A stretch of DNA of 64,000 bases from Mantamonas sphyraenae STR306 (GCA_026936335.1 JAPMXV010000025.1:1-64000), one strand, 5' to 3'; counted from the first letter of the stretch, positions 35,485-64,000 are shown. The notes: generated by a model not told the origin, from the letters alone. Program-made: numbers and translations.

Positions 35485-38400
35485 TCATGCGTCCAAGGCG
35501 TGCGTTTTGCGGAATGCCGGCCAGTATTTGCTCTCAAACAGCTCGACCAGACAAGCGTCGTACAGGTCGTGTGTAACCTCCTCCTTGTCCGTCTTGTGAA
35601 TGACATCGGACATGGTGGCAAAGTCCAGTTGCTCCAGGTAGCGGTCGCCATCGTCGTCGAAAAACTCGATGGTGATCTCGTTTGCGTGCTCTTGGCGCTC
35701 CACGCCCTTGAGCGTCTCCATTTCCACCACCGCCAACACAAACGCATTGGCATGCTCGTCTTCCACGTGTTCCTTCAGATAGGCAAGCAGCATGGCGCGG
35801 CTTTCTGGGTCGGTGAGTGCGTCGCTCATGCGTGCCTCTTCGTTGTTGATCAGTTCCACGGCACGCAGTTGCTGCTCCTTCCTCTCAATCGATTCCTTCA
35901 CGTGAGCGCCTCGCATCTGCACAAACTCGTCGAACGTAGACTCGGCAAACAAGCTGATGAGGATCGGATCGAGGAGACCGCGCTCGGGTGCCGCGCCCTC
36001 GTGTGCCACCTGCATGGTCTGCACCACCAGGCCATAGTCCACTTCGTGCACAAAGTCGTCGCTGTCGTCGTCCAGGAATCGTTCGACCACCTCTTCGACG
36101 GCAGCCTCGGCCTCGGCCACGTCCATGGGCTCGCTGCTTGCGTTGTCAAACAGGTTGTCGTAGGTCATGGCCGTGTGCACCAACGCAGCCACGTTGTCTT
36201 CCACAGACTCGTTGTTCTGCACATGCGTGTCCAGCCACGCAAGCAGTTCCCTGCGCGTGTCCAGCGACTGCAACGCAGCGTTCATCGACGCCAGCGGATC
36301 CTCCTCCAACAGGCGCTCCTCCACCACGTTCACGACCATGTCCCTTCGCCCACCATCGCCACTGAAAGCTGCCAATGCTGCGCTGGCCTGGCTGCGTGCA
36401 GGCAGTGGTGATCGTGAAGGCGAACGCGACGCTGCGGGCGAAATCGCAAGGCGGTCGCGCGACCGCGACGCACGAAGGCTGTCGCCACTTCCCTGGCCCA
36501 GGCGAGTGTTGGAACGCGATGGTCGAAGGCTGCCACCACTTCCCTGGCCCAGGCGGGTGTTGGAACGCGATGGTCGAAGGCTGCCACCATTTCCAGCACT
36601 TCCCTCGCCCAACCGTGTGTTGGACCTTGATCCACGCAATGTACCCGTTTCGGGCGAGCCCAACAGTCCGGTGTTGCTGTTGCTGCTTGTGTCGCTACCA
36701 CTGCTGCTGGTGCTCGTGGTGCTGGTCGCCGTTTCCAACCCGCCTCCCTTCTCCGCGTTCTCCTTGTCCCATTGTGTCATGGCGTCGTTTTCCAGTTCCT
36801 TGCGAACCTTGGCCAGTTCGGCCTCCAACTCGGCCTCCTGCACGGTGAACAGGTTGGTGATGGCCTTGCTGGCCACCACTTGGCGCAGCGACGTGCCCAG
36901 CTTTGCCAGGCGCCCGCTCACGCGCACCGAATCTGCTTCCGTCACCTGCACTCCCAGGCGTCGCTTCTTGTCCGCCTCCTCGCTCCTGCTTTCGTCAAAC
37001 TTGGCCAGCACCATTTCACGCTGCAGCTGTGCCACCTGCTTGCGCTTCACTTCTTCGTAGTTGCGCTGTGCCTGCAGGCGCATGTCGAGAATCAACTTCT
37101 GCTTGCGTGCCAGCAGCCAGAACTGCTTGGTCAGAGTCAGGCCAAAGTAGATCATGACGGTCAGGTTGAGGATGAACAGGAACACAGAAATGGTCACTTC
37201 GTCTGTGGTCGATGTCTCCGAGCTGAAGAAGAGCATGCCCGTGAGCAGCGTCACTGCGGTTGTGCCCAGAGAGATTGTCTCCAGGTTGGTGGCGCTCTTC
37301 TTGGCAAAGGGTCGCGCGTACAGATGGGCCACAATGGCACCCATGGACATCCACAGACCTGCATACAGCTGCGTCAGCGTCGACTGCTGCCACTGCACAA
37401 TCACAAACACCACAAACAGCTTGCGTGTCATAATCACAATCTCCCAGTAGAAGCGCTTCGATGCGTAGCCGTCGTACAGGAAGCGGTAGCGCAGCATCAC
37501 CTTGGGTGTGTTCAGCTTCTTGCGGTTCTTCATGAGCAAGTACAGTCCCAGAAAGATGACGCCAAAGCAAAACACGATGACGCCTGCCACACCCAGGGTG
37601 TTGCGATACAGCAGGTACGTTTCCGTCTGGCAGCTCACACGCATGTCATCCACAAGGTAGCTGGAACCGTCGTCAAAGGACTGGCAATTGAACACCTGGA
37701 AGAGGGCCTTGGACACGATGGGATGCACAATGAACAGCGACACCAGGATGGTCACGCTGTACAGAGACAGCATGCTCTTGAACCACAGGTGCTCGTAGTT
37801 GCCGTGGTACCTCTGTGCAGCCACCGCCTGCTCGATGCGCTTGGCCATGGCCGCACGGTCTTCCACTTGGTCTTCGTCCACGCTGTTGACAATCTCCCAC
37901 TTGGGCGGATCGGGAATCTTGTGGTCGGCCCGCATCTGCGGGATCACTCGCACAATCACCTGGTAGGCAATGGTGTACAGCAGCGCAGGCGTGACCACAA
38001 GCACCACAGGGAACAGACAGTAGATTTCGTACAGCTGGAAAAAGTCCAGCTTCATGGTGCAGTCCACAGGCTGGATGCTGAGCGAGAACAGTGACAGCGA
38101 CGACGCCTGGAACAGACCCGTGATTTCGCTGGTCCAGTTGAGACGGAACTCGCCCACAAACGCAAGCACCTGCAGGTAGTTGAGCACAATCTTCAACATG
38201 ATCGACGCCTGCGACTTGGATCCCATGGCTGTGCGCACCAGGAAAGCCAGCATCAGCAGAGCCGTGGAGAAGAACACAATGACCAGTGTGTAGTCGGCCG
38301 CAGGGGAACTGCACGGGATGCAACGGATGCCGAAGCGTCCGTATCCCGGCGAACAGACGGAACACAGGGGGCCCTCGTAGCCCTCGGCACACGTGTTGTT

Positions 38401-41400
38401 GCCTCCTCCCTGGCAGGCCACAGTGTTTCTGGCAGCGGTAGAACTTGTCCGATCCGTCCTTGGCACGGTAGAAGCCCGGCTGTGGATAGATCTGCTGGCC
38501 CTGGATGCAGACGCCGCCTTCGGTGCACTTTTGGCACACGCCCTCCTTCTCAAAGGTGTTGTCCTTGCAAACACACTGCGAGATGCTGGAGGCGCCCTTG
38601 ATTCCCTGGGTGTCGCGCTGGGTGGGACATACGTCACATCGGCCCTGGCCGGGCAGCGCTTGATACTGACCCGGTTCGCACAGTTCGCATTGACGCGAGT
38701 CGGCACCCGGTGCAAAGAAACCCGGCGCACAGATGCAATTTGCAAACGAGGGTTCGGTGCCTGGGTACAAATCGCCACAGGGGCGCACGCGAAGGACGTC
38801 GGGCACAAGGAGATCACGTACAGGCTGGGCCAGGGTGGTGCCAAGGCGACCCACGGCCGAGAACTGGTAGGTGTAGGTGACACCATGGCGACCACGCATG
38901 GCAAGGTTGGCAAAGGTGACGATTCCGTGCTGCAGGTTGGCTACGTTGCCGGAGCTGGAAAACGCAGCGGGCGTAAAGTCCAACGTCACAGCCAGGGAGG
39001 ACACGTTGACAAAGTTGCCCATGTCATCCACAGATCGTAGCACGGGCGACACAAGCGTCTCTTCGTTGTCGTACACACGTGTGCCCAGCGACAACACTTC
39101 CAACGCGGCCGGCGGCCCCGGAAGCACGGACACGGTCATCTCGGCGGAGACGTACCCTGCCCGAGTGCCAAACACAAGCGTGTACTGGCCAGCCAGTGCC
39201 CTGAGACGCAGGTCGGCAAACACAGCGGTGGTGCCCACCATGGTGGCGTTCGTCTTGCCTGACGCCAATGCATCAAGCGTTGACACAGTCGTCGCCATCA
39301 CGGCAGCCTCCTCCTCCTCCATCACAACCACCGATGCAGCCACAGGCGTGGCTGCATTGGCGTCCACACGCACAATGCGTTCGAGCTCCACCACGACAGA
39401 GGCGGTGGAGGGCAATGCACGTGCGTAGTTGCCGCCTGCATCGATGATGCGGATGGTGGTGCTGCCCACAGACACTGAGCCTGCATTGAGTCCTCCATAC
39501 GTCACCTCGACGGTGGATTGGTCGGATTCGAGGCGCACAGCGGTTCCGTTGCTGACCTGCACAGAGACATCGAGGGGCAGCAGACCATTGCTCTGGAAAC
39601 GCACCACGTGAGTGCCCACACGAGCCCTGCGCAGCTCCAGACCCTGTACGAGGGCACGGCCCAGGGACGAGGGAGTGACGAGGCCAAACACAGAGGTGGA
39701 ACGCAGTTCGACGGGATTGACACTCCTGTTGTTTGCATCCAACCCTCCGGTGCTGCTCACCACCACGGGCTTGATCTGACGCTGCAAGCTGTCGAACGAT
39801 CCCAACGCGTTGCCGCCGGCATCGAGGATGCGCAGATCGAGAGTGGGCACCTGAGTCCAGTCCGAAGCGTTGGCTTGCACAAAGGCAGACCCGTCGACCA
39901 GTGACATGCGCTCGGCAATGCCCACGGTGACGCGATACCACGCCACAACATCCTTGAGCCCGGCACTGGCCACGCGCACTGCGTACACCCCAACACGCGG
40001 TCGCTGCAATTGCAGCTGCGACAGAGTGACATTGCCTGTGGATGTGGTGAGCATCTGCGCGGCAACACTGTCGCTCACGTTGACCAGGTAGGCAGAGTAG
40101 GTGCGGGATGGCACTGCGTCAATGCCCACCAATGAATTGCCGCCAGCGTCCTGCACCTGCACCACAGCCACTGGCAATTTGCTGACAACAGCAGAGGGCA
40201 CTCCCACATTCGCCTGGTAGCCACTCCACAGACGAAGGGCCTCGGCTGCACCGGGCACAACCTCCACCGTCACCTGCACTCCAGCCAGACCCGCACTGCT
40301 GAATGCCACTGTGTAGCTACCGCGTGCAGGTCGGCCCAGGGCCAAGTCGCCAAATGTGCTCATGCCCTGTGAAAGGGCGCGTGTGGTGGTGCCACTCAAG
40401 TCGACCGCAGCGCCTGCAGGCTGCGTCTGCAGCAACGCCGTCACGTTGGCTGACGAGTCTGTTGGGTTGCTGCTTGCATCCACGACCTGCAACTGCACAG
40501 CACGCACACCTGCGTGCACAGCACTTGTTACGGCCGACGTGTTGTATGCAGTCACCACCAGACGAGTGGGCGGACCAGGCACCACGATGAGGTCTGTGTG
40601 CACGCTCTCCAGCTGGGCGGTGGTCACGCACACGCGATACACACCCTGACGAGGGGTGTCCAGGGTGAGACCGGACAAAGAGACGCTGCCCGACGTGGTG
40701 TTGGGCTGCAACAGACCATGCAGGGTGGTGGGTGCGGCGGCTGCGCACAGTGACACGTCCAACGTGCGCGTCACATTGTCCATTCCGACGAGCGAGTTGT
40801 TGCCTGCATCGGCCACAATCACGGGAACGGAGGGCAACGCAGTGCTGGCCACGGCGGGAAGGACATTTGGAGTCCAGCCCGGTGTCAGCAGCAGACGCAC
40901 AGCCGGACCATGAGTCACATGCACCGTCAGCGTGGTGTTTTCCACCCCGTATGCACGTACATCCAGCACCCACGAGGCCACACGCGGAGTGTGCAGCACG
41001 GTGCTGTTGAGAACCGCCTCGCCCTCGCGCATCACGTATGCTTCGGTCGTGGCAAGGCTCAACCCTGCGGTGGTGGGTGTCACCGACATGGTGCGTGTGG
41101 CCAGTGTGTCGGCCGCGCCAACCACGTTGTTACCTGCATCGCGCAGGCTGGCCACAACCGCAGGCACGTGTGACAGGCCACGGCTGTCCACGGTCACCGA
41201 GGTCTTGTCGAGCACCAGACGAGTGGCATCGCCCACAGTGACGTTGATGGCCACAAACACCTCCTTGGCATCGACAGACACCGAGAGCTGGTAGACACCC
41301 ACAACAGGGGCGAGTAGACCGTACCCTTGCAGTGTGTCGGAGAAGCTGATCGATTCCAGCGACTCGGGGATGTCGTCCTCGGTGGCCGCAATGGTGGAGG

Positions 41401-44400
41401 GGGTAAAGACACGCTGCCCCGAAGGGAGCTGCCGGAAGATGCGCACCTCAAGGGCAAGGTCGTCGCCTTCAGTCAACTCGTTGCCACTGGCATCCAAAGC
41501 ATGCACACCCACAGGTGCAATGGTGGTCACTGCCGCACTGCGCAGGGTCTGTTTGCCTCCAGATACAATCTTCACACCGGCATAGTCGCCCGGTTGCACA
41601 AAGACATCCACACGGTGCACGCCCAGCGAGGGCAGACCCGAAAAGGAAGAAACACCGCATACGAAGTCGAGTTGGGTGCCTTGAAATGCAATCCGGTCAG
41701 AGTGGCACGTGTGCCCACACGCACAGCGGATTGCGTACCGGCTGGATTCGCACCCGACGGTTGCACGTGTGCCACCAAAGTGGGTGCGGTGCCAAAGCTC
41801 GTCGGCGTCCCACTTGCGTCTCGTGTCTCCACCGTCATTGGCGCAATCACATTTGTGGCAGAACTCGAATAGACGCCTCCATTGGTGCTGGTGATCAGCA
41901 CCGACGAACGAGCAACACCCGGTGAGACGGAAATGCTCTGCGTGATGCCACTCAGGCCTGCCGAGTCCACATGCAGTGTGTACGTTGCGGACAAGGGCGC
42001 CAGCAGGGCCAGTTGAGTCATGTTGAGCACACCCTGAGTCATGGACGCAGACGCGCCCTGCGTGCGAAGGTACGGGGAAGCAGCCACGCCTTGGGTCAGT
42101 GTGGCCGACACCGTGCGCGTCTGTGGATCATCCGACCCCAAAGAGGCACCGGTGCTATCCACAGTGCGCAACGACAGTGGTGGGAGGGCGTTGACGGTGT
42201 CACAGTTGAGCAGCCACGGGTTGCCCACACCCACGGTGTTGCCGATCATCTCCAGGGCCACAGCCACGCCAGGCACAACGCGCAGGCTGTAACTGACGGT
42301 TCCCAGCGCCCCTGCGCTGCACTGCATCACGTACACGCCGTGAGCCGGGTTGTTGAGTGCAACGCCGCTCACCACCAAAGTGTCGTTCAGGGCACTGGTG
42401 TTGATGGCACTTGCCAGCGTGCCGGCAATGACAGATGCGCTCGTGTTGGCCAGTGCACAATGCACAGTGTGCACTGTGCGCAGACTGGCGTCCACAGCCA
42501 GGCCGTTCAGGTCCTGCGTGTCCAGCACGAGATCCGGAAGCGCCACTGTGTAGTTGGCACCCACGCTTCCGAGATCCGGATTGCGAGCCACCACGCGGTA
42601 CGCCGCACCGGGCACAATGTCCACTGTGACCTGTGTGCTTGTGAGTCCCGCCGATGTGATGCCGATCGTGTGGCTGCCGTTTGTGGGTCTGGTCAGCTGC
42701 GTCGTGCCAAACGTGGCCTTGCCCGACGCCGTAAAGGCACCCGTGTCTCCCGCCAGCACCAGCGTGGGTGCGTTGAGATTCACAGACACCTGCGGCGCAT
42801 TGCTGGCAAAGTTGTTGGCCACGTCATAGATGCCCACTTCAAAGGTGCCCAGGGGTACGGTCACGGCCGCATAGTACACCGGAGTGGGTGCGGTGATGAC
42901 CAGCAGCTTCGAGGGCTGGCCTGCAAGCACGTTGACATAAAACTGTGTGGGAGTGAGGCCTGTGCTGCTCACCTGCACCGCATACACAGTCGCCTTGGGT
43001 GCAAGCAAGGTCACGTTGTCAAAGCGAACCTCGGCGGCGGTGTTGTTCACCGTGGCCACGGTCAGCACGCCCACAAACGTACTCAGTCCGGTGGCGTTGG
43101 TGGCCGTCAGATTGACCTGTCGCACGCCCAACAGACTGGGTGCAGCCAGATTCTGGCTGGCGTCACGCAGAGACACACGAATGCCACTCACGTGCACCTG
43201 TTCGGCAGTTGTGGCTGATACCACGTCTGCGCCTTCAATGCGAAGCAATGTGGGTGCACCTGCGTCCACCTGCACTGTGTACGTCACACTGCTGAGACCC
43301 GGTGTCGCCAGTGTGATGCTCATCGTTCCGTTTGCAGGCGATTCCAAGGCAAGGGCGTCAAACGCCGCTGCGCCGTGGATCATCGACACAGACGAACCCT
43401 GTGCACGCACGCTGTTCCCTGTGGCAATGATGGTACGGTTGACACTGTCGTAGGTGCCGACGGTGTTGTCGCCGCCGTCCAGGGCCAGCAGAGTGATGCG
43501 CGGCAAAGCAACCACAGCTTGTGTCACCACGCGTGCGCTGGTGCTGTCGTTCAACAACAGACGCACGGGCGTGCCTGGCACAACCGTCACATTGAGAGTG
43601 GGTGTGCCCACGAGCGAGTCGGCGCGGAACTGAAGAGTGTACGTGCCTGCCTTGGGGGTGGCCAACGCCAGATCGCCAAACAGGGCCTCTGCATTGGCGG
43701 TATTGCGTGATTGGGTGCCTGTCAGTTGCGGTGGCGGGCTTCCGTTGCTGCCATTCAGCAGCTGCGCGTGTACCGTGTAGGACACAGTGTCCACGCCAGC
43801 AACAAGGGTTTCCGAGGCATCCAGGGCGGCCACGCGCACGGTGGGGATGGCAGTGCTGGTCGATGCCGACACCTGCACTGCGGCCATCGTTTGGTTGCTG
43901 ACCACAATGTGTGTGGCCTGACCCACGGTGATTTCCACCGATGTGGTCACGTTGCGCAGACTCGGATGGCCAATTTCCACAACGTACACACCCGGCTTCC
44001 ACGCCTGCGCAACAATGCCCGTAAACGTGGCGCGTGCATTGGCCAGCGCTTGGTATCGGCTGCCGGCAGACACCGGTGTGGCTGCACTTCCGTTGACGAA
44101 GCGCATTTCCATCACGCGGCCGGTGCCCACTTCCGTCGGCGTCCCACCTGCGTCGTACGCTTCCACACGCACATCGTTCAGCGCAATGGCCGCACTTGTG
44201 GCAAAGGTGTTGAAGTCGATCAGCAGGCGAAGCTCTTCGGGTTCGCCCTGTGTCACTGTCACGTTGTATGTCACTGTCGGCACACCCGCACTGCTGAACG
44301 ACAGTGTGTGTGCACCCGTGCGAGGACGCAGTAGCTCCAGATTTACAAACGTGGCATTGCCTGAGCTGACCACCAATCCGGTGGTCCCTGCCAACGCGCC

Positions 44401-53400: not shown

Positions 53401-56400
53401 CGAGGCAACCAGACCAAACGACGCCGCCACACTTGCGCCCATGCCCACCACTCCGGCATCCGGTGCACTCAGTTGCGCCGCATGCGCAAGTGCCTTGTTG
53501 GCACGCACAAACACAGACGTCTGCGCTGTGGTTGTGCTCGTCTCGGGTGTCGCCGTTGCTCCGCCGCCCACCACCAAGGTTGCACTTGCTGCCACACTGC
53601 CACCCAGGCGACCGGTGGCCACGGTGGGGTTTGCAGACAGCGCCCCGTTGCCTTGCACATACTCGAATGTGCCATCGCCAACCGCATACCAATGCTGCCT
53701 GTCCAGGGACACATACACGCCGCTCTCGCTGGTTGCTTGTGCCGGCGAGTCGCATTCCACTTGGGTGCTGCTCACCACACGTGCCTGTACGTACCCACTG
53801 CCACCAAAGCGACACGCTGCCATGCGCGACGAGTCGTTGTTGTTTGCCAGTCCCGCGCCGATCCCAATCACCACGCTGCCACCCTGCACAGCACCACCCA
53901 CCTGTTCCTTCGACGCCATGGTGACCGCGTACACGTCAAACACGTCGCCGCTTGTCGCACTTCCCTGTGTGGCGTGGCTCACCTCGAAGCGTGCCTGACC
54001 CACCTTGCCTCCCATGTCGGGTGTGGTGCAGTTCAGCATCTGTCCTGCGTCGCTGTGCACGCTGCACGTCAACGGACCCGTCAGTGTTCCGTCCGACAGC
54101 CGCATGCGCACCACGCTGCCTGCGTTCAATCCCGTGCCACGAAGCAGCACCGACGTGCCGCCCTGTGTGGGTCCACGCATGGGCGTGAACGAGCCGATCT
54201 GCGTCGTGCAGTTGTCACACACAAACGTGGCTGCGTTGAAGCATGCGTTGGGACACTGTGCACCCACGCGCACCAAGCGACCGCCCGAGTTGGCCGTCGT
54301 CTGACCGTACACAAACCCTTCAGCGCCAAGCGCCGCCTGCCCTGTAAGCGGCAGTTCGTTCACAGCCAACTCAAGTGTGCGTGCGAGTGCAAACGTGTCC
54401 GATGCAGACGGGTTTGCACGGAACACTTGGCTGCCAAATCCCGTGGTGACCACCAGCAGCGTGCGAGTGTCCACTGCATACACGCCGCCGTTGCCAAAGT
54501 TGCTCAGCAACGTGCGGCTGCTCTGCGACAACACCTGTCGCTGGCTCCACATCCCACTCGTCGACGACACACCATACAGGTACACCTGTCCATTGGTGCC
54601 CTCCTTGTGGCTACTCACCGCGAGCACACGCGTGGGCAACAACGCGATGTGGGTGCCGTACGCCTGACCCGCGGCTGGGGCTGCGCTCGTCAGACGCTGC
54701 ACAAAGCCCCATGCGTCGTAGCCACCCTCGTTCTGACGCATCACATACACTGCTCCACCGGCACTCTCCGACGGTGCACCCACCACCAGCCAGTCCTGGC
54801 TGGCTGCGGATGAGGCACCAAACCCTGCGCCTGCTTCCACGTGTGCATTGGGCGCCTGCACACTCGTCGTGGCCACGTATGCACTCGACGTTGCGCCACT
54901 CGTGCGCTTCAGCACTTGCACCACACCGGCCCCAGCCAAGCCGTTCACTGTCGCCGACGGAGCGCTAGCAAAAAGGAACACGTCGTACGCACACAACTGT
55001 GCGCCCAGGTCGCCTCCAGCCGGACCCGACATCCACACCTGCACCACTGCACCTGCTTGCAGGTCCACAATACTGACTGCACCCTTGCTCTGACGCTTGG
55101 GGGCACCCACGGCCACGCGCTGTGTGCCGTCCAGTGCAACCACGCTTGCCCCAAACTGCTGGGTTGCGCCTGTGTCACCGTCCGCCTGGATGGTTTTGTC
55201 CAAAGTCCATGCGCCGCCACCGTTGCGGGAATAGCTGCGCACACGGCCGCTTGTCGACTCGCTGCTCATGCCCACCACCAGCTTGCCATGTGCAAACACC
55301 AGTGGTTCCCTGCCAAGCTGCTGTGCCGCAGAGCCCGTTTCCGTCTCGCCGGCCAGCAGTTTGAACGATTCAAGCGACTCGACGTTGACAAAGTAGCTGC
55401 CATCGCTGGAATAGCTCATGGTGACCACTCCCGTCGATGCACCGGCCACAGGTGTTGCACACTGTGCATGGGTGCTGCTCATCACAATTGCATCGCGTTC
55501 CAGGCTGCCAAATCGGCACACCTGCTTTCCAGTGTGCACAAATCCACTTCCGTACACATCCACAACTCCCGGCACAGTTACATCCGCCCCGTTGCCACCC
55601 ATGTGTGTCACGCGTGTGTCAAACACGGGCAGGACGTACGGCTCGTACGAGGTGCTCGTCGCCACACTGGGCACGTACATCGCATACGACGCGGCTGGCA
55701 GTGTGTTGGGAATCGTACACGACAGCACATAGTCGCTCTTCACCGAACATGCCACACTTGTGTTGAGTGCAGACGATTTGAGTTCAATCGACGTGGCTGA
55801 GCTCAGTCGGAAGCCGTACACTGTCAGCGTTGCACTCTGGCCCTGACGCACAGCCACAGGATCGATCTCTTTGATGACGCGCACACACGCACCGCAGGAC
55901 AATGATCGATGGTCCATGCATGTGTTGGGTCCACATGGTGGCGATTGCACGCTAACACTGCCGTCGTTCTTCGAAGTGCCCACGTTCTCGAGCAACTGTC
56001 CATCCATCATCAGCGCTTCGTCACCAATGGCAATCAACTGCTGTCCCATGCGTTCTTGGTCGTGCAGCGGCAGACGCGGTTCCAGAACCCGGTCTGCCAC
56101 CCACGTGCCACCCTTGCTCAGCCATCGCTGAGCGGCGCCGGTTTGAGACAAACCAGACCCCGCCGGCGACGTGTAGGGCATCGACACGTAGAACACAGAC
56201 AAATCAGGGAGGGCACGGATGCGCCACGCGCGAGTCACGAGTGCACTGCCCTGTATCAGCGTCTCGCGAAGGTACCAGCGGTAGGAATCGGACGACGCAC
56301 GCTCGTACACGTGCACAGCTCCCGTCACAGCCGCCGACGCACCTTGGTCCACACAATAGCCATAGTGCGCCACCAGAGCTTGCCTGCCATTTTCGTGCAT

Positions 56401-59400
56401 GGACACGCTCAGCCCAAAGTACGTGTTGTCCACGTCGTACTTCACCGCACACGCCTTGGTCGGGCTGTCCACACGCTGTCGCTCAGCACGCACCTTGTTG
56501 TTCTCCAGGTGGAAGAAGTAGACAGAACCCGTGCGTTGGGTGGGCTGCGAATAGTCGCGGAATGACTCGCCCACAATCAACGCGGTGTTCGAAATGTCCA
56601 CCGCCTCGCCAAACCGTGCGTCGTCTTCAGGGTCGTTCGCAGACGTGTCACTGGCACTGAATGCCTGCAGACGTTCAATCAGACCCCAGTTGTTGGTGCC
56701 ACCCACGTGCCTTCCGTACACGTACGCCACGCCTGCGTTCAGCGAATTGTCCGTGGAAAAGTCTGCGTTCCAACCGCCAACAATCAGCATGTCGCCCCGG
56801 ATGCGGATGGCACGTCCATCGCGTCCAATCTGTGCAGCTCGCATGTCTCCCTCCAGTTCCTTCACCACAGTCCAGCTGTTGGACGCTGTCAGTGACGCAA
56901 CGGCGTGGTTGCGCTTCAGGATGTACACAAAGCCATTCGTGTTACGGAACGGCAGCGAAACCAAAAGCTCATCGTTTTGCATCTCCACCGCCATGCCCAG
57001 CTGCGTCCCATCTGCAGGTGCCGTGTTGAACACCGCGTGGTCCAGCGCATCCGTGCCCTGCACCCAGTGTGTGCCATTGTTCCAGCCAAAGAAGATGTCA
57101 CCTCTGTTGTTGCCTACTCGATCCGACAGGCGCATACCAATGCCGCACAGGCCCAACGAGCACCCGATGCCCTGTCCGTAGTAGCCTTCCACATCATCGC
57201 GCGGTGCGTACCAACGCAGGATGGGCACCAGGGTCACTGTGCCCACCACAAAGGTGTTGCCAGCCACAGACACCTGCAGCGTCTCTCCAGACAGCGCCAG
57301 CGTGTCCGGCGCCGTGCAGCGCACCTTTGTGTCGGACACAATGGACGCTGCCAGCTGCGTGCTGCCAAGCGTACAGCTTACAGCGCCCGTGCTTCCAACA
57401 GGGAACCCTGTGCCCAACACATCCATCTCTGCAGACACAGTGGCTGTGATGTTGCTCGACACCACGCTCGGAGGGTCCACAAATGTGACTTGCGGGTGAA
57501 CCGTGTAGCTTGCCACAGGAATGCGTGCCAGGCGCACGTCGTGCACACCCTTGGTAGGCACGATGGGCAGCTGGCACTCCATGCGCAGCGTGGTCATCAG
57601 TGTGCAGTTGGTCGTGTTGGCTTGCAGCACGCCGTCCTTCCACAGCTGCAGGATGGGTCCACTCTCTCCCTCCAGCTTCAGTGTGTGGTGAGACACAACC
57701 GTCACTGTCAACTGGTCTGTGCGCACTGCTGCGTTTGGCAGCACAAAGCTCAGCGGTCGACGGCACGGCACGCACTCAAACGTGGTCCCGTCAAAGCACA
57801 CTCGAGTGGGGCAGTCGCCAATAAGGCCCACATCACCCGCACCCTGTGCCATTGCGCTAGCGTATGGCCGCCCAAACCCAATGGCTTCGTTGTCCATCAG
57901 ACGCACGGAAAGCGCTGAGCCCGAACCACGCGCCATCGGCACAATCATGCGCTTGAGTTCAAACTTGCCCAGCGTCGGATTGTACGTGTAGAACAGAGGC
58001 GTGCTGTACTGGTACGTGTTGTGGCTCCAGCGCATCACAAACCGTTCCGCAAGCACCACCAGCGTCTGTCCGTCCGAGGTAAATGCCATGTCAGCGCCCC
58101 AGCGCTGCAGTGTGGCAGGGGCCTCTGCCGTGCCGCCCTGTGGCCATTCATAGTCCGACAAAGTGGACGCATCCAGCTGCTGGATCATTCCCCACTTGCG
58201 TGACCCGCCCACATCCCGTCCATACACACGCACCATGCCCATGCGGTCGTATGCCATGCCCGTGAGTGGAGTGAGTGTCCTGTTTGTCCACTCGCGTGCA
58301 CCCACGGCCGCAAACAGCTCTGTCACAGATGAACCGTACCCGAAAAAGGGCCGCCTGTCCTCCAGATACTCGTTGTCGTCGATTGTGAACACAGCTTCGT
58401 CCTTCCACAGACCATTCTCTCGACGCATCATAAACGCGCAGCCGGGAATCACGATGGATGTTGCGTTGGGGCGGCATTCGTACGAACCACCCATCACCAA
58501 TTCGTCGTTCCACACCGTGAGCCCTCCCAAACCAAAAGCGCATGTTCTGGTAGTAGAACTGCTGCGGTGCCACCAGATCGTACTCACTGAACGAGTTGAT
58601 CGACGGCTGGTGCCGCTTCATCCACATGAACCCTCCCTGGTTGGCGCCACCGATGTCCAGCAGGTTGATGGGCATGTATGCATAAAAGTCGGTGACCTTG
58701 ATGGCACGATACTGGCTTGCCAGCTGATCGGCCTTCAGTGGCTCCTTGGTGATCCCCTTGACAAACGACCACGTGCCGTTTGCTTCCCGTCGATGCACTC
58801 GCACCGCGCCCGCATTGTTCAAGGCGGCCAATTTGTCGCGCAGCGAGCTGAACATCGCCAATTCGTCATCCACCATAGACACCGACCGCAACAGCGTGTT
58901 GGCTTGGTACTGATCGGCCTCGGAGAGCGCAAAGCGTGTGTCGAAGCTCCACAGGCGCGTGTCCGGGTTGCGCCGCCACACATACACTTTGCCATACTCT
59001 GAGTTTGTCTCGGTGGCAGGTGCCATCAGTGTGTTGTGGCTGGCCGATAGGTCAAACAGACCCAGGTACATGTTTCGGAAGTCGTCGTAGTAGGCGTCCG
59101 GGATCATGTGCGACTGTGGCGTGTACTTTTGCACAGAAGCATCGGGTGCGCCACACACGGATGAAACAAGGCCGTTCAGATTGACATTCATCCAGTTTTG
59201 TCCATCCAGGGCCACCTCCATGGATTCCATGGTGTTGGTGGCCATGCTTGGCACGCACGCAAGGTGGCTGCCGTTGTTGTGAGCATGCATGTACACCTTT
59301 CCAATGCGGCACTCGGCATACCGCGACCACGGCATGTTGCCACTGCCCACCATGTGCACCATGATCGGGTTTGTGGAGGTGTAGCACGATTTGCCCTGGG

Positions 59401-62400
59401 CTGGCGCCGCCGTCAGCGACGCTGTCCACCCGCTGCTGTCGTACACCTCAATCATGGGTGCCCGGTACCACGATGCCATGGGTGTGGTGCCCACGTACAC
59501 ATGTGCCACGCCTGTTTCCGGCAGATTGGTCTGCACTGTGCAGTTCAGCCGGTTGCGGTTGTGCCGCGTACATGTGGCCGTGGCAACCGTCCCTGTGGCG
59601 TTGTACACCACACGGAGCGTCGCTGTGCTGGGATAGTCTCCAATGGCATCGCCTGTGATTACCAGTTGTTGGCCACCTGTCTTGGCCCACACTGCAGGGT
59701 GCACAGACGTGATGCCCACGTCACACTCGCCCATCGGCACACAGGTACGGTACCGCATGTTCTTGCACAACGACGTGGGACACATCGGTGACAGCACCTG
59801 TGCTCCGCCAGTGTCCTTCAGCGGCGTATCTGCTTGGGGCGAGCCGGACAAAAGATCCACGGCCGCGGTTGCTGCAACCGAGTACGAATTCAGCGTCACA
59901 GGCGTCTGGTCCACGTACGGGGTCACCTCCACGATGCGCTTCGCGTCCAGGTCGTCGTTCATGTTCAACAACAGACCCACCACCGTTTCGGATTCACTCA
60001 ACCACACGCGACGTGAGCTGGAGTACCAAAAGGCAAACGGGCCCATCAACGTGCTCGAGTAGCTGTACACAAAGGACGAACGCGAGCGACCGTACAGTGT
60101 CTTGACGTACACAAAGGGCCCAGTGCTGGGCTTTGCTCGGGTGCCGTTGCTGCGGCGCAACACGTGGACCGCGCCGTACGCAGATCCACCGTCCACCTCG
60201 CGCTGATTGTAGCAGCTCATGAACACTGTGTCCTCAATGACGGCCATTCCCCGTCCGCAGTAGGATGTGGCGATCGGATTGGGATTGTACACCACCTGCT
60301 GCGTGTATGCACCCTTCTCCATGTCAAAGTAGACCAGCAAGGCAGCACCCACCAGGTTGTTGCCGTTGTACGACGCACGCGAAATCCCAAACGCTGCCAC
60401 GTCGTGCGATACAGCCACCGAGTCACCCGGTCGCACATCCTTGTCGGCATACACAAACTCGGCCGGCAGTTCCAGCGTCATCATCTCCACAAACGGAGAC
60501 GTCATGCTTCCACGCGCAAACACAGACACCACACCGTCGCGTGTCAGCGTGCCCACATTGCCTGGGTACGGTCCGAAACGGTCGCCTCGTGTGCCATCCA
60601 GCATCAGGTACGGGCTGGCGGCAAGGAAAAGCGTGTACAGTGTCAAATCCTTGTTCGTGCGGTACACCATGTTGGTCATCTCGAATTCGCCTGTCTGCGG
60701 GTTGCGCTGGTACTGATGCATCATTGCGTTATACTGGTACGCAATAACCAGAGTGTCGTCGCCTGCAAACGTCATCACGTAGCCAAAGCGCATCTTTTCC
60801 GCGGCGACGCCGTCCTGAACCCACGGTTTGATCTCTGCGTGTGTGTTCCACGTCATGTTGCTGGCGGTATACTTGTACGTCCATGCGCGCCCGTACCGTC
60901 CGGGAGAGTTTGTCGACCACGGCGCACCCACCACCATCAAATCCGAATTGCCAGCCAGGTTTTCTCCAAAACGGGTTTCTTCCAGAGGGGTGCCCGGGTT
61001 GGTGATCACTTGACCATCCTTGAACAGAGTCAATGCGCCTGCCACCCCCTGCACTGTGTGGAATGTGCTGTTGTCCAGCGACACCTCCAATGCAGTGGGC
61101 AGCGTGGTAAGCATGTTGCGTGACACCACACACGACGCGTGTGTGCTGTTCAACACCTCCAGTGCACTCGTCACGGCGCCTCCGTTCCAGCGACACACTC
61201 CGGGCGATCCAGCGCCCGTTGCACTCAATCCCGTGCCCACAATGTCCACGGTTGTGAATCGCGACAGCGAAATGATGCGAGGTTGCATCGTCAACGTGCC
61301 CACCGTGCTTGGGTTCACGGCCACCAACGTTTGACCGGGCGTGGATTGTCCGTTGATCATGCTGACCGTAAACTGGCCCGCCTGCAGGGCTGGGAGCGTG
61401 CACAGCAGTTTGCTGCCACGCACATAGGTGCACTGCACCGTGTGTGGTCCTCCGGGACCCGTCAACCGGATGCTGTGGCGCTGAGTGTCATCGGAGAAGA
61501 AGTAGACGCCAAACACAGACAAGACCTGGCCTGCTGCGTTGTACGTCAGCGTGCGTGGTTCGATGTCACGCACACGTGTCTCGCATCGTCCGACCTTGCA
61601 GCTCCACGAGGGAGCGTCGAAGCACTCGCTCGCGGTGTCACACTTCAGACTCATCATGCGTGGGCGTCCATTGGCCACCTGCGGTGTCAACGAGTTGCCC
61701 CATCCCTGTGCGGCACCAAACCATCCGTTGTCACCCGAGATGCTCGTCACTTCGCCATCTTGGTCGCCCGAATTGACCACAGCCATCCGGTCCAGCTCCC
61801 GCCATGCGTCCACCTGTCTGTCGTCGCGCACATACATAAAGTATGCACCCGAGCTCTGTGGTCCGTATGTGTCTGAACCCACCATCACGTCGCCAAAGTC
61901 GTTGACGCTCGCACCGTTGCCGTAGTCCATGTCGAAGCCATCAAAGTGCGCGCGAAACTCCACCACCTGCGACCACAGGCCACTGCTGTTGCGTCGGAAC
62001 AGCCACACTGCACCCTGATCCACCTGTCGCGTGTCGGGATCCTGTGCAATTTCGTCGCCCACCACCAGCATCTGCGCGTGGGCGTTGTACACCATTTCGT
62101 ATCCAAACCTACCGCGCAACACATTGCCGGGCGCACGCAGGGGATGATCCAGCACCTGGTCCAGTCCATAGTTCAGTGCGCCTCCCGTGTTGCGTCCAAA
62201 CACAAACACCTTGCCCATCCCATCGTCATCGTACGCTGCCACAAACACTTGGTCCTCACTCATGCCCACACGCCAACCAAACCTACCCGCTGGCGATCCC
62301 AACGGGTTGTTCAGCACCTTGATGATGCCCCATGCGTTTGTGCTCGGTGTGTTGCGATGCATGATTGTCACAACGCCGTCGTTCTGCGTGCTCCGTTCCG

Positions 62401-64000
62401 GAAACGGTGTTCCGGCAATGATCTGCGACAGTTCCGCCGCATTCGGGTCGCCTGCAACCATCCAATCGCCAAAGCCAGCCAGGGAGTAGCACACCGTACC
62501 TGTGCCCGTGACAGGTGTCACCGTGCTGACAAAGTCGTACGAGCCGGTGGCGCCGCGAAGATAGGCCAGGCAGGCACCCACGTTTGAGTCCCAGTACCTG
62601 CCAGCACCTGCCATCATCCAATCACGCATCAAATACAGTCCCTCTTCGCCAAACTCGGTGTCTGGGCCCGGTGTGTAGGCAGGCACGGCGCCGGGGAGCA
62701 CCGTTTGCAAATGTTCAAAGCTGCCGTCCGCCTGACGTTCCCACAGGATGACTTCCCCTGTGACGTCGTCGGAGCCACGGGAGCCTGCTGCAAGTACGTT
62801 ATAGTCTGCATACAGATTTTGTCCAAGGACGTCGCTTGTGGTGGGCGGGCGCGTGAGGTTCATGGTCTGTTCGTACTGAATGTCCAGCGTGCGTGCAGGC
62901 ACGGTGGAGGATACGCCGTCGTTGTAGCTGACAGTGACAGCCACTGCACCCGCAGCGGTCTCGTCCAGCCGGTCAGCAGGGCCTGTGAAGCACACGCCCA
63001 TGGTGCTGTTGACCACACGCATCATGCCTGATGCATACACACTGTTGCTACCGTAGTTGCATCGCGGTGCTCGATGCAGTGCTGTGTCCCCTGTGGGGAA
63101 CCCTGTGCCCGTCACCGTCACCAGCGAGCCGCCCTGGATGTACGTCGCGGTCGTCAACATTCCCGTCGCACTGATGGGCGCATAGAAGTACACAGTCGCC
63201 ACATGGGTGCCATACGGCAATGCATGTGATCCCTCGGCTGGGATGAACACATCTGCATACCCTGCTGCTCCAGACGGCGACGCGGGCGCGGTACACGTGA
63301 TTATCTGCGCACTCACTCGCGTGCAAGTCACGTCCGTGTGGGCGTTGGTTTGTTGCGAGCGGAACCGCACAGTGGGTGTGGCCGCTGCAGGGAAGCGAGC
63401 ACCATACAGAGTCACTGTGGCCCCTCCTGCCTGGGGCACCGTGTCGGGACGCACCGCACGCGGTCTCCAGCTGCATTGTGTGCTGCACGACCACGTTTGT
63501 GTGTTGACACACTCATTGCTTGCACAGTTGGGACTCAGTTCTGTGTCGGGTTGGGGTGTGGGGGGCCAGGAAAGCAGTGTGTGTGAGCGCCGGAGGAATG
63601 TTTTTCTACGAATGGAAGGAAAAGATGTCCGCCCCCCGTTCATGAGCTGCCATACACACAAACTTACCAAACAGTCGTGTCACGTTGTTGTTATCTGCTG
63701 TTGTGCTCACGAGGATGCTCTGTGAGGTAAAGTGCACATGGTGAGGCGCTCCGGGCACCGATTCGCTGTGAACACGCGTCCAGGAAGTCGCGTTTGCACG
63801 TGCATAGACTGTGGTGCGGGGTGTTGAGTGTCAGTTGGGTGCGATGGTACGTTTGCGGCCCATGTTTGCACACGATGGGTGCGGTGGTGCCGTTAACAAG
63901 CGTCGCTGTGGACGTGTTTGCAGGAAAGGAAGTTTCAAACTAACCCATGACGCGAGTGTTGCTCGACACAGAAATCTGTGACAAAACGGCCACGGTGTCC
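35485..64000 (-). CDS. Giant multi-pass cell-surface receptor/adhesin, 5'-partial (>9,400 aa in window). Exons 63945..>64000, 63668..63808 and 35485..63540; single-base frame breaks at ~58535, ~41651, ~38427
   Basis: ORFs 58148..63670, 41572..58587, 37673..41620 and 35485..38913 join by 1-nt corrections with motif continuity (MRF|GLGG, YAVF|SSFSGL, FYRCQ|NTVAC). Introns 63541..63667 (GTAAGT) and 63809..63944 (GTTAGT) keep the frame open to the window end. Confidence 0.88.
35500..36285 (-). other. Two tandem RGS (regulator of G-protein signalling)-like domains: ~35915-36285 and ~35500-35829
   Basis: ALTDPESRAMLLAYLKEH...F+LAVVEM...ANEITIEFFDDDGDRYL...DLYD...LFESKYWPAF follows the RGS helix pattern. 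The upstream segment ALQSLDTRRELLAWLDTH...VVERFLDDDSDDFV...LFAESTFDEF is a diverged second copy. Confidence 0.65.
36474..36640 (-). repeat. 51-nt coding tandem repeat (LRPSRSNTRLGQGSGGS), about 3 copies
   Basis: Near-identical units gaaggctg.c.ccacttccctggcccaggcg.gtgttggaacgcgatggtc on the + strand. Confidence 0.9.
37130..38295 (-). other. Multi-pass membrane domain (~9 TM helices) of the giant protein, preceded by Cys-rich (ephrin-receptor/GCC-like) repeats
   Basis: CAEGYEGPLCSVC, KIVLNYLQV, DMRVSC, FLYDGY...FYWEIVIMTRK and RPF...NLETISL, typical of the protist TRP-C-terminal-like multi-pass family. Nine hydrophobic stretches counted. Confidence 0.8.
38800..44920 (-). repeat. 18 tandem ~110-aa Ig/invasin-like repeats (stalk)
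   Basis: Recurrent V.PG.A..L ... P.+.+...DA.GN ... A.F..L.L..P..G.Y.+...S.GL motif; 18 copies counted by eye. Confidence 0.75.
47350..63540 (-). repeat. Nine complete ~1.65-1.95 kb super-repeats: Cys linker + 2 IPT/TIG domains + FG-GAP (integrin-alpha-like) beta-propeller
   Basis: Ten 4-Cys linkers (e.g. CPTRVCFDGTTFECVPC, CPNACFNAATFVCDNC, CAPTCFNTERWECAKC). Each is followed by GG..V.+.G..F IPT motifs and then FG..VA...+VGAP...GAVYV blades. Confidence 0.85.

What the first reader, a model, noticed from the sequence alone, without database searches (positions are those of the whole stretch)
35485..64000. Giant integrin-like propeller-array receptor fused to a multi-pass membrane domain and tandem RGS domains
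Seen: after three 1-nt corrections, one reading frame of more than 9,400 aa runs off the window. In order it has at least 9 [IPT-IPT-FG-GAP propeller-Cys] modules, further IPT/filamin-like domains, a discoidin-like domain, 18 Ig-like repeats, Cys-rich repeats, ~9 TM helices, a Ser/Arg tail and two RGS-like domains. Known: 7TM-RGS proteins such as plant RGS1 control G-alpha through receptor-regulated GAP activity, and integrin alpha chains carry a single FG-GAP propeller. Inference: this may be a roughly megadalton adhesion or prey-sensing receptor that regulates heterotrimeric G proteins through RGS rather than GEF activity. I do not know of this architecture being described.
Basis: partly seen in the sequence, partly recalled or inferred. 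Interest (0 to 1): 0.88.

Follow-up and report, generated by a model that had tools for sequence, protein, structure and literature searches.

The report
Megadalton propeller receptor with RGS tail
This is one real gene, about 29.5 kb long, of the gliding flagellate Mantamonas sphyraenae, encoding a ~9,700-residue (~1 MDa) surface protein that joins ten integrin-like propellers and ~18 repeat domains to a nine-helix membrane domain and two cytoplasmic RGS-like domains; it is one of at least 16 such giant receptor genes in this genome, a lineage-specific variant of the receptor-RGS signalling known from plants and Naegleria.

Summary
The minus strand carries four overlapping open stretches (35488-63679). 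Independent short-read contigs show exactly two indels in 37201-42900, and they sit at two of the three frame breaks. Applying them gives one 7,710-codon frame, so those breaks are PacBio consensus errors. The third break lies in a C run and was not tested.

The frame does not run off the window. A stop at 63680 lies inside a predicted 404-nt intron. Exon 1 continues beyond the window to C25:65047 and adds a signal peptide and one more propeller. The model is 9,718 aa and 1,021 kDa.

Pfam confirms TIG, FG-GAP_2, Ephrin_rec_like, DUF7630 and two RGS domains. The "discoidin" call found no support, and the ~112-aa repeats have no Pfam match.

The membrane domain has nine helices and is not a GPCR. 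It belongs to a very large, uncharacterised eukaryotic family with no solved relative.

Both RGS domains lack the two conserved Gα-contact asparagines, so GAP activity is doubtful.

The gene is not unique. At least 16 loci in this genome, and Mantamonas plastica transcripts, share the 9TM-plus-RGS layout. First-stage notes of this scan describe similar giant RGS-tailed receptors elsewhere in this genome. Adhesion-type 7TM-RGS receptors are already described in Naegleria.

Verdict: a new variant of a known kind.

The parts
63945..64000 (-). 3' end of exon 1. The exon continues beyond the window to C25:65047 (or 65011). It encodes a signal peptide and an N-terminal FG-GAP propeller ('propeller 0'), and has a 1-nt frame error in a six-C run at C25:64586-64591.
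   Evidence: The module HMM and FG-GAP HMM hit minus-strand frames at C25:65056-64622 and 64581-63976. A hydrophobic signal-peptide-like stretch follows the Met. The upstream neighbour is a TIP49 gene ending at C25:65165.
63541..63944 (-). Predicted intron 1: 404 nt, GT..AG, phase 1 on both sides. It contains the in-frame stop at 63680-63682.
   Evidence: the donor G|GTTAGT and the acceptor ..ACAG|AA join the two frames without a stop, and the junction runs into the 4-Cys linker. No RNA evidence was available.
35485..63540 (-). Exon 2 (28 kb), ending with the stop codon at 35485-35487. It holds the rest of the ectodomain, the 9TM domain and the RGS tail.
58467..58470 (-). Frame break J1: a four-C run where frame 0 passes to frame 1. 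An extra base in the assembly is presumed.
   Evidence: Not checked against reads.
41646..41647 (-). Frame break J2: one base is missing from the assembly.
   Evidence: an A is put in behind 41646 in contigs of X1, X2 and X3; the frame is restored.
38423..38429 (-). Frame break J3: one extra base in the assembly. Two 13-nt alleles are seen in the reads against 14 nt in the window, which looks like a merged consensus of two haplotypes.
   Evidence: one base left out at 38426 plus G38423C in X1 and X2; one base left out at 38429 in X3; the frame is restored.
47338..63451 (-). Nine modules of TIG-TIG-seven-blade-type FG-GAP propeller-4Cys linker (C-x4-C-x7-C-x3-C). Their bounds are 61559-63451, 59702-61558, 57742-59701 (spans J1), 55864-57741, 54187-55863, 52483-54186, 50719-52482, 49084-50718 and 47338-49083.
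   Evidence: Pfam TIG and FG-GAP_2. Local HMM map. Alignment A3 has 18 invariant columns, including the four linker Cys. The AF2 model of module 7 (pLDDT 67, propeller part 75-88) matches integrin alpha headpieces at E ~1e-9.
45586..47337 (-). Two further TIG pairs without a propeller. One ~112-aa repeat lies between them.
44821..45585 (-). A Cys-containing domain of ~255 aa and unknown fold.
   Evidence: No Pfam match at E<=1. The sequence is shown.
39008..44820 (-). Seventeen tandem repeats of ~112 aa with a ..PG..(25-30 aa)..D-A-x-G-N motif. They are probably beta-sandwich stalk domains.
   Evidence: Self-similarity and iterated HMM. The only Pfam hit is a sub-threshold CarboxypepD_reg-like match.
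38305..38790 (-). Cys-rich juxtamembrane region with Ephrin_rec_like and DUF7630 matches.
   Evidence: Cysteines are invariant in family alignment A2.
37141..38304 (-). Nine-helix membrane domain. It has an extracellular beta-hairpin between TM4 and TM5 and a cytoplasmic loop of ~60 aa after TM3.
   Evidence: AF2 model on a 77-sequence alignment, pLDDT 90.7 and pTM 0.86. Hydropathy. Sub-threshold Pfam TRP PF06011 match.
36271..37140 (-). Cytoplasmic linker. A long helix continues from TM9, followed by a Ser/Arg/Gly-rich low-complexity stretch with three copies of a ~17-aa unit.
   Evidence: translation; helix 403-499.
35911..36270 (-). RGS-like domain 1.
   Evidence: Pfam RGS, two stretches. 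Genome profile search, 89.8 bits. Alignment A1.
35497..35829 (-). RGS-like domain 2.
   Evidence: Pfam RGS best stretch. Genome profile search, 104.4 bits. The A1 profile hits RGS16, RGS8, RGS2 and RGS4 at E ~1e-22.

Best explanation
ANATOMY (shown). C25:65047->35488 on the minus strand is one protein-coding gene of Mantamonas sphyraenae. It has two exons, a predicted 404-nt intron, and four single-base consensus errors in the PacBio assembly. It encodes a ~9,718-aa, ~1.02-MDa surface receptor.

A signal peptide sends the ~8,750-aa ectodomain outside the cell. That ectodomain holds ten FG-GAP propellers, nine of them in TIG-TIG-propeller-4Cys modules, then TIG pairs, an unknown domain, ~18 repeats of ~112 aa and a Cys-rich cap. 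A nine-helix domain of the Ephrin_rec_like/DUF7630-associated family anchors the protein in the membrane. The odd number of helices puts the C-terminal tail in the cytoplasm. That tail has a long helix, a Ser/Arg-rich linker and two RGS-homology domains.

MECHANISM (inferred). The ectodomain binds surfaces, prey or matrix. Engagement changes the clustering, conformation or trafficking of the 9TM domain. This sets where and when the tethered RGS domains meet the cell's few G-alpha subunits. The logic is that of the receptor-RGS systems of Arabidopsis (AtRGS1) and Naegleria (7TM RGS).

Both RGS domains of this paralogue lack the conserved G-alpha-contact asparagines. They may therefore act as weak GAPs or as G-alpha-GTP-binding scaffolds rather than efficient GAPs.

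FAMILY. The gene is one member of a Mantamonas-specific family of at least 16 giant 9TM-RGS receptors. Their ectodomains differ.

MY ODDS
- Single intact gene with this architecture: ~0.9.
- Tail acts on or binds G-alpha: ~0.45.
For: GENE INTEGRITY
- The only indels between the window and independent contigs over 5.7 kb lie at the two frame breaks, and both restore the frame.
- Paralogues carry ectodomain, 9TM and RGS in uninterrupted frames of 3,383-10,900 codons.
- M. plastica Trinity transcripts marked 'complete' encode 5,219-6,831-aa proteins with the same 9TM-plus-RGS x2 layout.
- The species' transcriptome has contigs up to 32.28 kb (PMC10492846).

IDENTITY OF THE GENOME
- 25.06 Mb, 78 contigs and 59% GC match the published FALCON assembly.

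DOMAINS
- Pfam matches.
- The module fold matches integrin alpha headpieces.
- The 9TM model is confident, pLDDT 90.7.

TOPOLOGY
- Signal peptide plus nine TM helices. The only other stretch to reach the hydropathy threshold is a marginal one (1.74 against a threshold of 1.7) at model residues 2457-2476 in the ectodomain.

G-PROTEIN CONTEXT
- About three G-alpha genes score above the Pfam cut-off.
- Of the 36 RGS profile matches in the genome, 23 lie just downstream of a 9TM domain, in 16 loci.
- The RGS profile hits bona fide RGS structures at E ~1e-22.

PRECEDENT
- Naegleria 7TM RGS proteins with adhesion-like ectodomains are G-alpha GAPs in vitro (PMC9283941).
- TM-RGS fusions are recurrent in eukaryotes (PMC3971589).
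Against: - No RNA run was available, so the intron, the 5' end and the single transcript are inferred.
- J1 and the C-run error beyond the window were not checked against reads.
- The runs used come from one study. They may be the same culture as the assembly, so they are independent of the PacBio consensus but perhaps not of the strain.
- In alignment A1 the two RGS domains carry His or an insertion, and Glu-Gln or His-Glu, where canonical RGS domains have the SxEN asparagine and the N128-type asparagine. By my recollection of the RGS4 literature, that second asparagine matters for GAP activity.
- The window's tail gave no significant hit to solved RGS structures by single-sequence search.
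- No binding prediction or assay was possible.
- The function of the 9TM domain is unknown and could be transport or channel activity.
Confidence: 0.6

Rival explanations
1. The tail domains are degenerate RGS-homology modules with nothing to do with G-alpha. They would serve as a scaffold, trafficking or dimerisation device, as in Axin, AKAP10/D-AKAP2 or SNX14-type RGS domains. The protein would then be mainly an adhesin or gliding-substrate receptor.
For: Both G-alpha-contact asparagines are missing in both domains, while the genome's free RGS proteins keep them. The Pfam scores for the tail are modest (34.5 bits). PMC3971589 notes that some RGS domains have lost GAP activity and act as scaffolds.
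Against: RGS tails persist in at least 16 paralogues and in M. plastica. At least one paralogue domain, the second RGS of C12, keeps the N128-type asparagine. Most RGS-like domains of the genome sit on these receptors although only about three G-alpha genes exist. That pattern is hard to explain if they are unrelated to G proteins.
Confidence: 0.27
2. The nine-helix domain is a channel or transporter related to the fungal TRP/FLC family (PF06011). The protein would be an adhesion- or force-gated conductance, with the RGS tail as an accessory.
For: Sub-threshold PF06011 matches recur in the window protein and in paralogues (21-24 bits against a cut-off of 28.5). ESM-Atlas clusters with the same fold carry PF06011 in 12% of members.
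Against: All PF06011 matches fall below the gathering score. No solved channel or transporter resembles the model (best Foldseek E 0.2; best VIA Z 7.5, within background for helical proteins). Family members carry signalling-type partner domains such as RCC1, TIR_2, START and RGS, which fits a receptor better.
Confidence: 0.1
3. The frame breaks are real. The locus is a decaying pseudogene or several separately expressed ORFs.
For: There are four frame discontinuities in 29.5 kb of a Racon- and Pilon-polished assembly. Two of them are unverified.
Against: Both breaks that could be tested are absent from the short-read contigs of three runs, and no other indel occurs in 5.7 kb. All four lie in homopolymers or at a heterozygous site. 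There are no in-frame stops or loss of repeat conservation across 9,700 codons.
Confidence: 0.03

Closest known systems
Naegleria fowleri 7TM RGS proteins (28 genes; PMC9283941)
   Same: These are surface receptors with a C-terminal cytoplasmic RGS domain. Some have adhesion-type ectodomains (EGF, lectin, GPS). They form a multigene family in a free-living bacterivorous protist, and GAP activity on the organism's own G-alpha subunits has been shown for several.
   Different: They have seven helices against nine here, and the membrane fold is unrelated. They carry a single RGS against a tandem pair. Their ectodomains are far smaller, with no FG-GAP propeller arrays. The Mantamonas tail domains lack the canonical contact asparagines.
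Arabidopsis AtRGS1 (7TM-RGS)
   Same: A membrane receptor tethers an RGS box next to G-alpha. An extracellular cue is thought to control GAP access.
   Different: AtRGS1 has a short N-terminus, 7TM, one canonical RGS box and ~460 aa. The protein here is ~9,700 aa with a 9TM domain of another family.
Integrin alpha subunits
   Same: Both have an FG-GAP beta-propeller. Foldseek matches to alpha4, alpha5, alphaV and alphaIIb headpieces reach E ~1e-9 with TM ~0.45.
   Different: Integrin alpha has one propeller, thigh and calf domains, a single TM helix and pairs with a beta subunit. The protein here has ten propellers in series, each preceded by TIG domains, and the blades match Pfam FG-GAP_2. 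By sequence, the closest propeller arrays are giant FG-GAP_2 proteins, mostly unnamed metagenomic ones. The few that a source names are bacterial: Planctomycetes, Candidatus Poriferisodalis and Ilumatobacter.
Ephrin_rec_like/DUF7630-associated 9TM proteins of protists (for example Stentor SteCoe_22963, and the Anaeramoeba protein annotated 'G protein-coupled receptor-related')
   Same: The Cys-rich cap plus nine-helix domain is homologous (E down to 1e-116; invariant Cys, P369, W-E and R-K motifs). Many members are also giant, up to 7,961 aa.
   Different: Among the 150 best representatives, only the Mantamonas proteins carry RGS tails. Others end right after TM9 or carry other modules, for example RCC1.
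Adhesion GPCRs (aGPCR)
   Same: Both join a very large modular adhesion ectodomain to a multi-pass membrane signalling domain.
   Different: No GAIN/GPS domain was detected. The membrane fold is not class-B 7TM. The output is a fused RGS, not GEF activity on G-alpha.

Membership tests
RGS domain (Pfam PF00615) | Sequence match above the curated gathering score | tested here: met
   34.5 bits against a cut-off of 23.9, E 3.1e-8, two stretches in the last 311 aa. A profile that includes both domains hits RGS16, RGS8, RGS2 and RGS4 at E 1e-19 to 1e-22.
RGS domain (GAP-competent R4-type) | Conserved G-alpha-contact residues: the asparagine of the S-x-E-N motif (RGS4 N88) and the asparagine equivalent to RGS4 N128 | tested here: not met
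   Alignment A1. The free RGS proteins of the genome have ..SEEN.. or similar and ..N-[IVL]-[DS]... Window RGS2 has D-E-H plus an inserted residue, and E-Q. Window RGS1 has V-E-D-N, offset by one residue, and H-E. Alignment in these loops is only moderately certain.
RGS domain (GAP-competent R4-type) | Acceleration of G-alpha GTPase, and binding to G-alpha-GDP-AlF4 | not testable with these tools
   This is a biochemical assay. The complex prediction was not run because the G-alpha genes are split by introns and cannot be given unaltered.
7TM-RGS receptors (AtRGS1 / Naegleria type) | Seven-helix GPCR-like membrane domain | tested here: not met
   The AF2 model has nine TM helices. There is no significant similarity to any GPCR (best Foldseek E 0.2, TM 0.13).
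7TM-RGS receptors (AtRGS1 / Naegleria type) | RGS domain C-terminal to the last TM helix, on the cytoplasmic side | tested here: met
   Signal peptide plus nine TM helices places the tail inside the cell. Positive residues flank the cytoplasmic ends.
Integrin alpha chain | FG-GAP beta-propeller | tested here: met
   Pfam FG-GAP_2 at E 1e-42 to 1e-43 per half. Fold match to integrin alpha headpieces (the model has only moderate confidence, pLDDT 67).
Integrin alpha chain | Single propeller followed by thigh and calf domains, one TM helix, and heterodimer with a beta chain | tested here: not met
   There are ten propellers, TIG pairs instead of thigh and calf, and nine TM helices. Beta-chain pairing was not examined.
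Ephrin_rec_like/DUF7630-associated 9TM family (no curated name for the membrane part) | Homology across the Cys-rich cap and all nine helices, with the family's invariant residues | tested here: met
   phmmer finds 8,584 representatives at E<=1e-3, the best at 8e-116. Invariant C18, C21, C32, C35, C119 and P369, and near-invariant W324-E325 and R331-K332, are present. ESM-Atlas matches reach TM 0.66-0.77.
Fungal-type TRP/FLC channel family (Pfam PF06011) | Match above the gathering score (28.5 bits) | tested here: inconclusive
   21.3-24.3 bits over profile positions ~245-410 in the window protein and a paralogue. The match recurs but stays below the threshold.
Adhesion GPCR | GAIN domain with a GPS autoproteolysis site next to the membrane domain | tested here: not met
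   No GAIN or GPS match appears in any Pfam scan of the juxtamembrane region.

The most novel reading that the evidence does not exclude
The nine-helix Ephrin_rec_like/DUF7630-associated domain is an unrecognised, eukaryote-wide receptor chassis that signals through whatever cytoplasmic module is fused to it: RGS, RCC1, TIR or START. In Mantamonas, a radiation of at least 16 giant versions carries 23 of the genome's 36 RGS-like domain matches. These would form the main sensory input to its three G-alpha proteins, so that surface contact or prey would be read out by receptor-controlled RGS action instead of GPCR-GEF action.
Probability: 0.25. Interest if true: 0.8.

Novelty: new variant of a known kind. 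Interest (0 to 1): 0.55.

Why it matters
Mantamonas belongs to the CRuMs supergroup, which branches at the base of Amorphea (PMC10492846). How its G proteins are wired therefore bears on the old question of whether early eukaryotes controlled G-alpha through receptor-RGS or receptor-GEF logic (PMC9283941, PMC3971589).

The 16 loci with a fused RGS-like tail hold 23 of the genome's 36 RGS profile matches, against about three G-alpha genes. This makes the question testable in one small genome.

The work also gives a first functional handle, a fused signalling output, on a very large and uncharacterised nine-helix membrane family with more than 8,500 cluster representatives and no solved structure.

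On the practical side, it shows that the published assembly carries homopolymer and haplotype-merge frameshifts that break giant genes in annotation.

Tried and rejected
- Single-sequence search of the tail against solved structures found nothing relevant. A profile was needed.
- The first Pfam scan of the whole 1,151-aa stretch missed RGS. The match appeared only when the tail was scanned alone.
- Foldseek and VIA-align wide of the 9TM model gave no match above background. This is not proof of a new fold.
- Word-indexed search with the RGS region of the C12 paralogue (candidates of 1,300-4,137 aa) found nothing. It says little, because the M. plastica relatives are longer than that range.
- Word-indexed search with the propeller array found only FG-GAP_2 giants, mostly unnamed metagenomic ones. 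The few named ones are bacterial, and none has the TIG-TIG-propeller-4Cys module.
- The paralogues and the M. plastica proteins do not share the window's ectodomain modules.
- No Pfam hit supports the 'discoidin-like' domain or an Ig fold for the 112-aa repeats.
- No paper mentions DUF7630.
- No RNA run was offered, so transcript structure is untested.
The co-occurrence count therefore rests on coordinates, not on read-through of each locus.
- Rejected reading: the frame switches are short introns. No sequence is lost at the switches, and the short-read contigs show 1-nt indels there.

Full report
WHERE WE ARE

The window is the first 64 kb of contig C25 of a 25,061,354-base, 78-contig assembly. 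The best relatives of the membrane domain are Mantamonas plastica transcripts in EukProt. The assembly figures (25.06 Mb, 78 primary FALCON contigs, 59.19% GC) are those of the published Mantamonas sphyraenae genome. That genome was built from PacBio reads and polished with Racon and Pilon (PMC10492846).

THE OBSERVATION

On the minus strand, four long open stretches overlap end to end:
- 58151-63679
- 41575-58617
- 37676-42127
- 35488-38940

Reading the overlaps in both frames shows that the protein sense passes from one frame to the other with no sequence lost. The switches lie at about 58467-58470 (J1, a CCCC run), 41646 (J2) and 38426 (J3).

I laid the contigs of four other public runs of the same organism on 37201-42900. 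All four come from one study and are probably short-read libraries of the same culture. Apart from about 0.3% substitutions, the only length differences in 5.7 kb were these:
- One base left out at 38426 (X1, X2) or 38429 (X3).
- An A added behind 41646 (X1-X3).

These are exactly J3 and J2, and they act in the direction needed. Applying them merges three stretches into one frame of 7,710 codons.

At J3 the two read-derived versions differ from each other at two bases, and both are one base shorter than the window. The window therefore looks like a merged consensus of two haplotypes.

Two are shown and one is presumed.

THE 5' END

The frame does not run off the window. A stop lies at 63680-63682, and the only in-frame Met after it has no signal peptide.

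The open stretch begins with the same C-x4-C-x7/8-C-x3-C linker that ends each module, so something should precede it. I fetched C25:63001-73000. Module and blade HMMs hit two further minus-strand frames, at 65056-64622 and 64581-63976.

The first of these holds a Met followed by a classic hydrophobic signal sequence and then FG-GAP blades. The two frames are joined by dropping one C from a six-C run at 64586-64591.

A donor (G|GTTAGT at 63944) and an acceptor (..ACAG| at 63541) are both in phase 1. They join the second frame to the main one without a stop, which makes a 404-nt intron.

The next gene upstream, a TIP49/RuvB-like ATPase, ends at 65165. The gene therefore starts at 65047 or 65011.

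The conceptual product is 9,718 aa and 1,021 kDa. It has 94 N-x-S/T sequons in the ectodomain. Hydrophobic segments are confined to the signal peptide and residues ~8780-9172, apart from one marginal stretch at 2457-2476 in the ectodomain that barely clears the threshold. The intron and the start codon are predictions, because no RNA run was available.

ANATOMY

Propeller modules:
- Pfam finds TIG and FG-GAP_2 repeatedly.
- Self-BLAST shows a period of 560-680 aa.
- Iterated HMMs place TIG pairs at eleven positions and up to seven blades per module.
- An alignment of eight modules has invariant Cys in the first TIG and an invariant four-Cys linker.
- An AF2 model of module 7 has mean pLDDT 67, with 75-88 in the propeller part. 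It matches the headpieces of integrins alpha4, alpha5, alphaV and alphaIIb at Foldseek E ~1e-9 and TM ~0.45. It also matches generic seven-blade propellers.
- By sequence, the closest propeller arrays are giant FG-GAP_2 proteins, mostly unnamed metagenomic ones. The few that a source names are bacterial.

After nine full modules come:
- two TIG pairs,
- a ~255-aa domain with no Pfam match (the 'discoidin-like' call is unsupported),
- 17 tandem repeats of ~112 aa, plus one earlier copy, with a D-A-x-G-N motif and only a sub-threshold CarboxypepD_reg-like hit,
- a Cys-rich cap matching Ephrin_rec_like and DUF7630.

THE MEMBRANE DOMAIN

A full HMMER search of 1.84 billion cluster representatives found 8,584 proteins at E<=1e-3. 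Many are giant, with the domain near the C-terminus. Named examples are a Stentor DUF7630 protein and an Anaeramoeba 'G protein-coupled receptor-related' protein.

A 77-sequence alignment shows invariant cysteines and W-E and R-K motifs. It gave a confident model (pLDDT 90.7, pTM 0.86) with these features:
- nine membrane helices,
- an extracellular hairpin between TM4 and TM5,
- a long cytoplasmic helix continuing from TM9.

Neither Foldseek (best E 0.2) nor an exhaustive VIA-align scan (best Z 7.5, within background for helical proteins) found a solved relative. It is therefore not recognisably a GPCR or a TRP channel. Pfam's fungal TRP/FLC model PF06011 scores 21-24 bits against a cut-off of 28.5.

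ESM-Atlas clusters with the same fold (TM 0.66-0.77) come from many eukaryotic phyla. They carry Ephrin_rec_like or DUF7630 and assorted partners such as LRR, TIR_2 and START. One hit carries RCC1 repeats after the membrane domain. The domain looks like a general receptor chassis.

THE TAIL

Scanned alone, the last 311 aa match Pfam RGS above threshold, in two stretches. A profile of these domains plus the genome's other RGS domains hits RGS16, RGS8, RGS2 and RGS4 at E 1e-19 to 1e-22.

In the alignment, the free RGS proteins of the organism keep the S-E-E-N-type motif and the N-[IVL]-[DS] asparagine. These align with 'SEENLEFW' and 'KEVNIDHE' of RGS16. Both window domains have other residues there. 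The second RGS of the C12 paralogue keeps the latter asparagine.

From my own knowledge of the RGS4-Gi-alpha1 work, these asparagines contact the switch regions, and the second is important but not strictly essential for GAP activity. GAP competence of this paralogue is therefore doubtful, not excluded.

With a signal peptide and nine helices, the tail is cytoplasmic.

CONTEXT IN THE GENOME

There are about three G-alpha genes.

The 9TM domain has about 85 loci in the genome, by my count of the 130 matches. Many sit in very long open frames, up to 10,900 codons on C26.

A profile search for RGS gives 36 matches. In 16 loci the RGS-like match lies a few hundred bases downstream of a 9TM domain, on the same strand and mostly in the same open frame:
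- C25
- C12
- C7
- C32
- C59
- C43
- C68
- C5
- C70:167-169k
- C2 (two loci)
- C26 (two loci)
- C54
- C53
- C61

Three paralogues that I read through carry Cys-rich cap, 9TM and RGS in uninterrupted frames. Their ectodomains are different: filamin/GEX2-type Ig repeats, TIG, and Laminin_G_3/pentaxin.

M. plastica transcripts P0010/P0159 (6,023 and 6,831 aa) and P0011/P0160 have the same layout on single assembled mRNAs. Among the 150 best 9TM representatives, no non-Mantamonas protein has an RGS tail.

First-stage notes of this scan describe giant RGS-tailed receptors on other pieces of this genome.

HOW IT PROBABLY WORKS

Shown:
- one gene,
- ectodomain outside and tail inside,
- RGS homology,
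- G-alpha genes present,
- a family-wide fusion.

Inferred: ligand or surface engagement of the ectodomain controls the position, clustering or turnover of the receptor. This in turn controls the access of the tethered RGS domains to G-alpha. The same logic is proposed for AtRGS1 and for the Naegleria 7TM RGS proteins. Those have adhesion-type ectodomains, and their RGS domains are G-alpha GAPs in vitro (PMC9283941).

De Mendoza et al. already noted that TM-RGS fusions recur by convergence (PMC3971589). The Mantamonas family would be another, independent case, built on a different membrane domain.

Rivals:
- A non-G-protein scaffold role for the degenerate RGS domains.
- A channel or transporter role for the 9TM domain.
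- A pseudogene, now unlikely.

NOVELTY

The kind of system, a receptor with a fused cytoplasmic RGS and an adhesion-type ectodomain, is known.

New here:
- the membrane chassis (nine helices, uncharacterised family),
- the tandem divergent RGS pair,
- the size, and the serial array of ten propellers,
- the fact that the 16 fused loci hold 23 of the genome's 36 RGS profile matches.

I found no paper describing it. Related sequences sit unannotated in EukProt.

Noticed in passing
window 26108-33655 (+) and 33535-35343 (+): A 2,516-codon open frame converges on the giant gene, and a 603-codon frame follows it. Neither has any Pfam match at E<=0.001.
   Followed up: partly
C25:65165-65977 (-), just beyond the window (L002:2165-2977): This is the C-terminal exon of a TIP49/RuvB-like AAA+ ATPase (PF06068 at E 5e-80, plus TIP49_C). 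It is the upstream neighbour on the same strand and bounds the 5' end of the giant gene.
   Followed up: yes
whole genome G000; for example C26:134659-136692 within a 10,900-codon open frame, C61 (6,812 codons) and C54 (6,823 codons): The 9TM domain family has about 85 loci in a 25-Mb genome, many in open frames of 2,000-10,900 codons. Giant receptor genes must take up a sizeable share of the coding DNA.
   Followed up: partly
G000:C70:27082-35793 (-): A 2,904-codon open frame ends in a canonical-looking RGS domain but has no match to the 9TM domain. This is a second kind of giant RGS protein.
   Followed up: no
P0144 (5,923 aa, source not looked up), residues 2506-3600: This member of the 9TM family carries RCC1 repeats after the membrane domain. 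ESM-Atlas clusters of the same fold carry TIR_2 or START. The cytoplasmic output of the family appears to be modular.
   Followed up: partly
window 38423-38429: Short-read contigs give two 13-nt alleles that differ at two bases, while the assembly has 14 nt. This looks like a haplotype-merge consensus error in a diploid genome. Similar errors may break other long genes of this assembly.
   Followed up: partly
window 1-26000: There is a strong and sustained negative GC skew (-0.2 to -0.57 in 2-kb windows) on the + strand of the telomere-proximal 26 kb. It stops abruptly near 28 kb.
   Followed up: no
window about 36400-36560 (-): The cytoplasmic linker holds three tandem copies of a ~17-aa Ser/Arg/Gly-rich unit (..SLRPSRSNTRLGQGSG..). 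These are possible phosphorylation or binding sites.
   Followed up: no
G000:C54:237922-238782 (+): A small 337-codon frame holds two canonical RGS domains in tandem, with the SEEN-type motif and the asparagine present. It would be a useful positive control for assays on the receptor tails.
   Followed up: no
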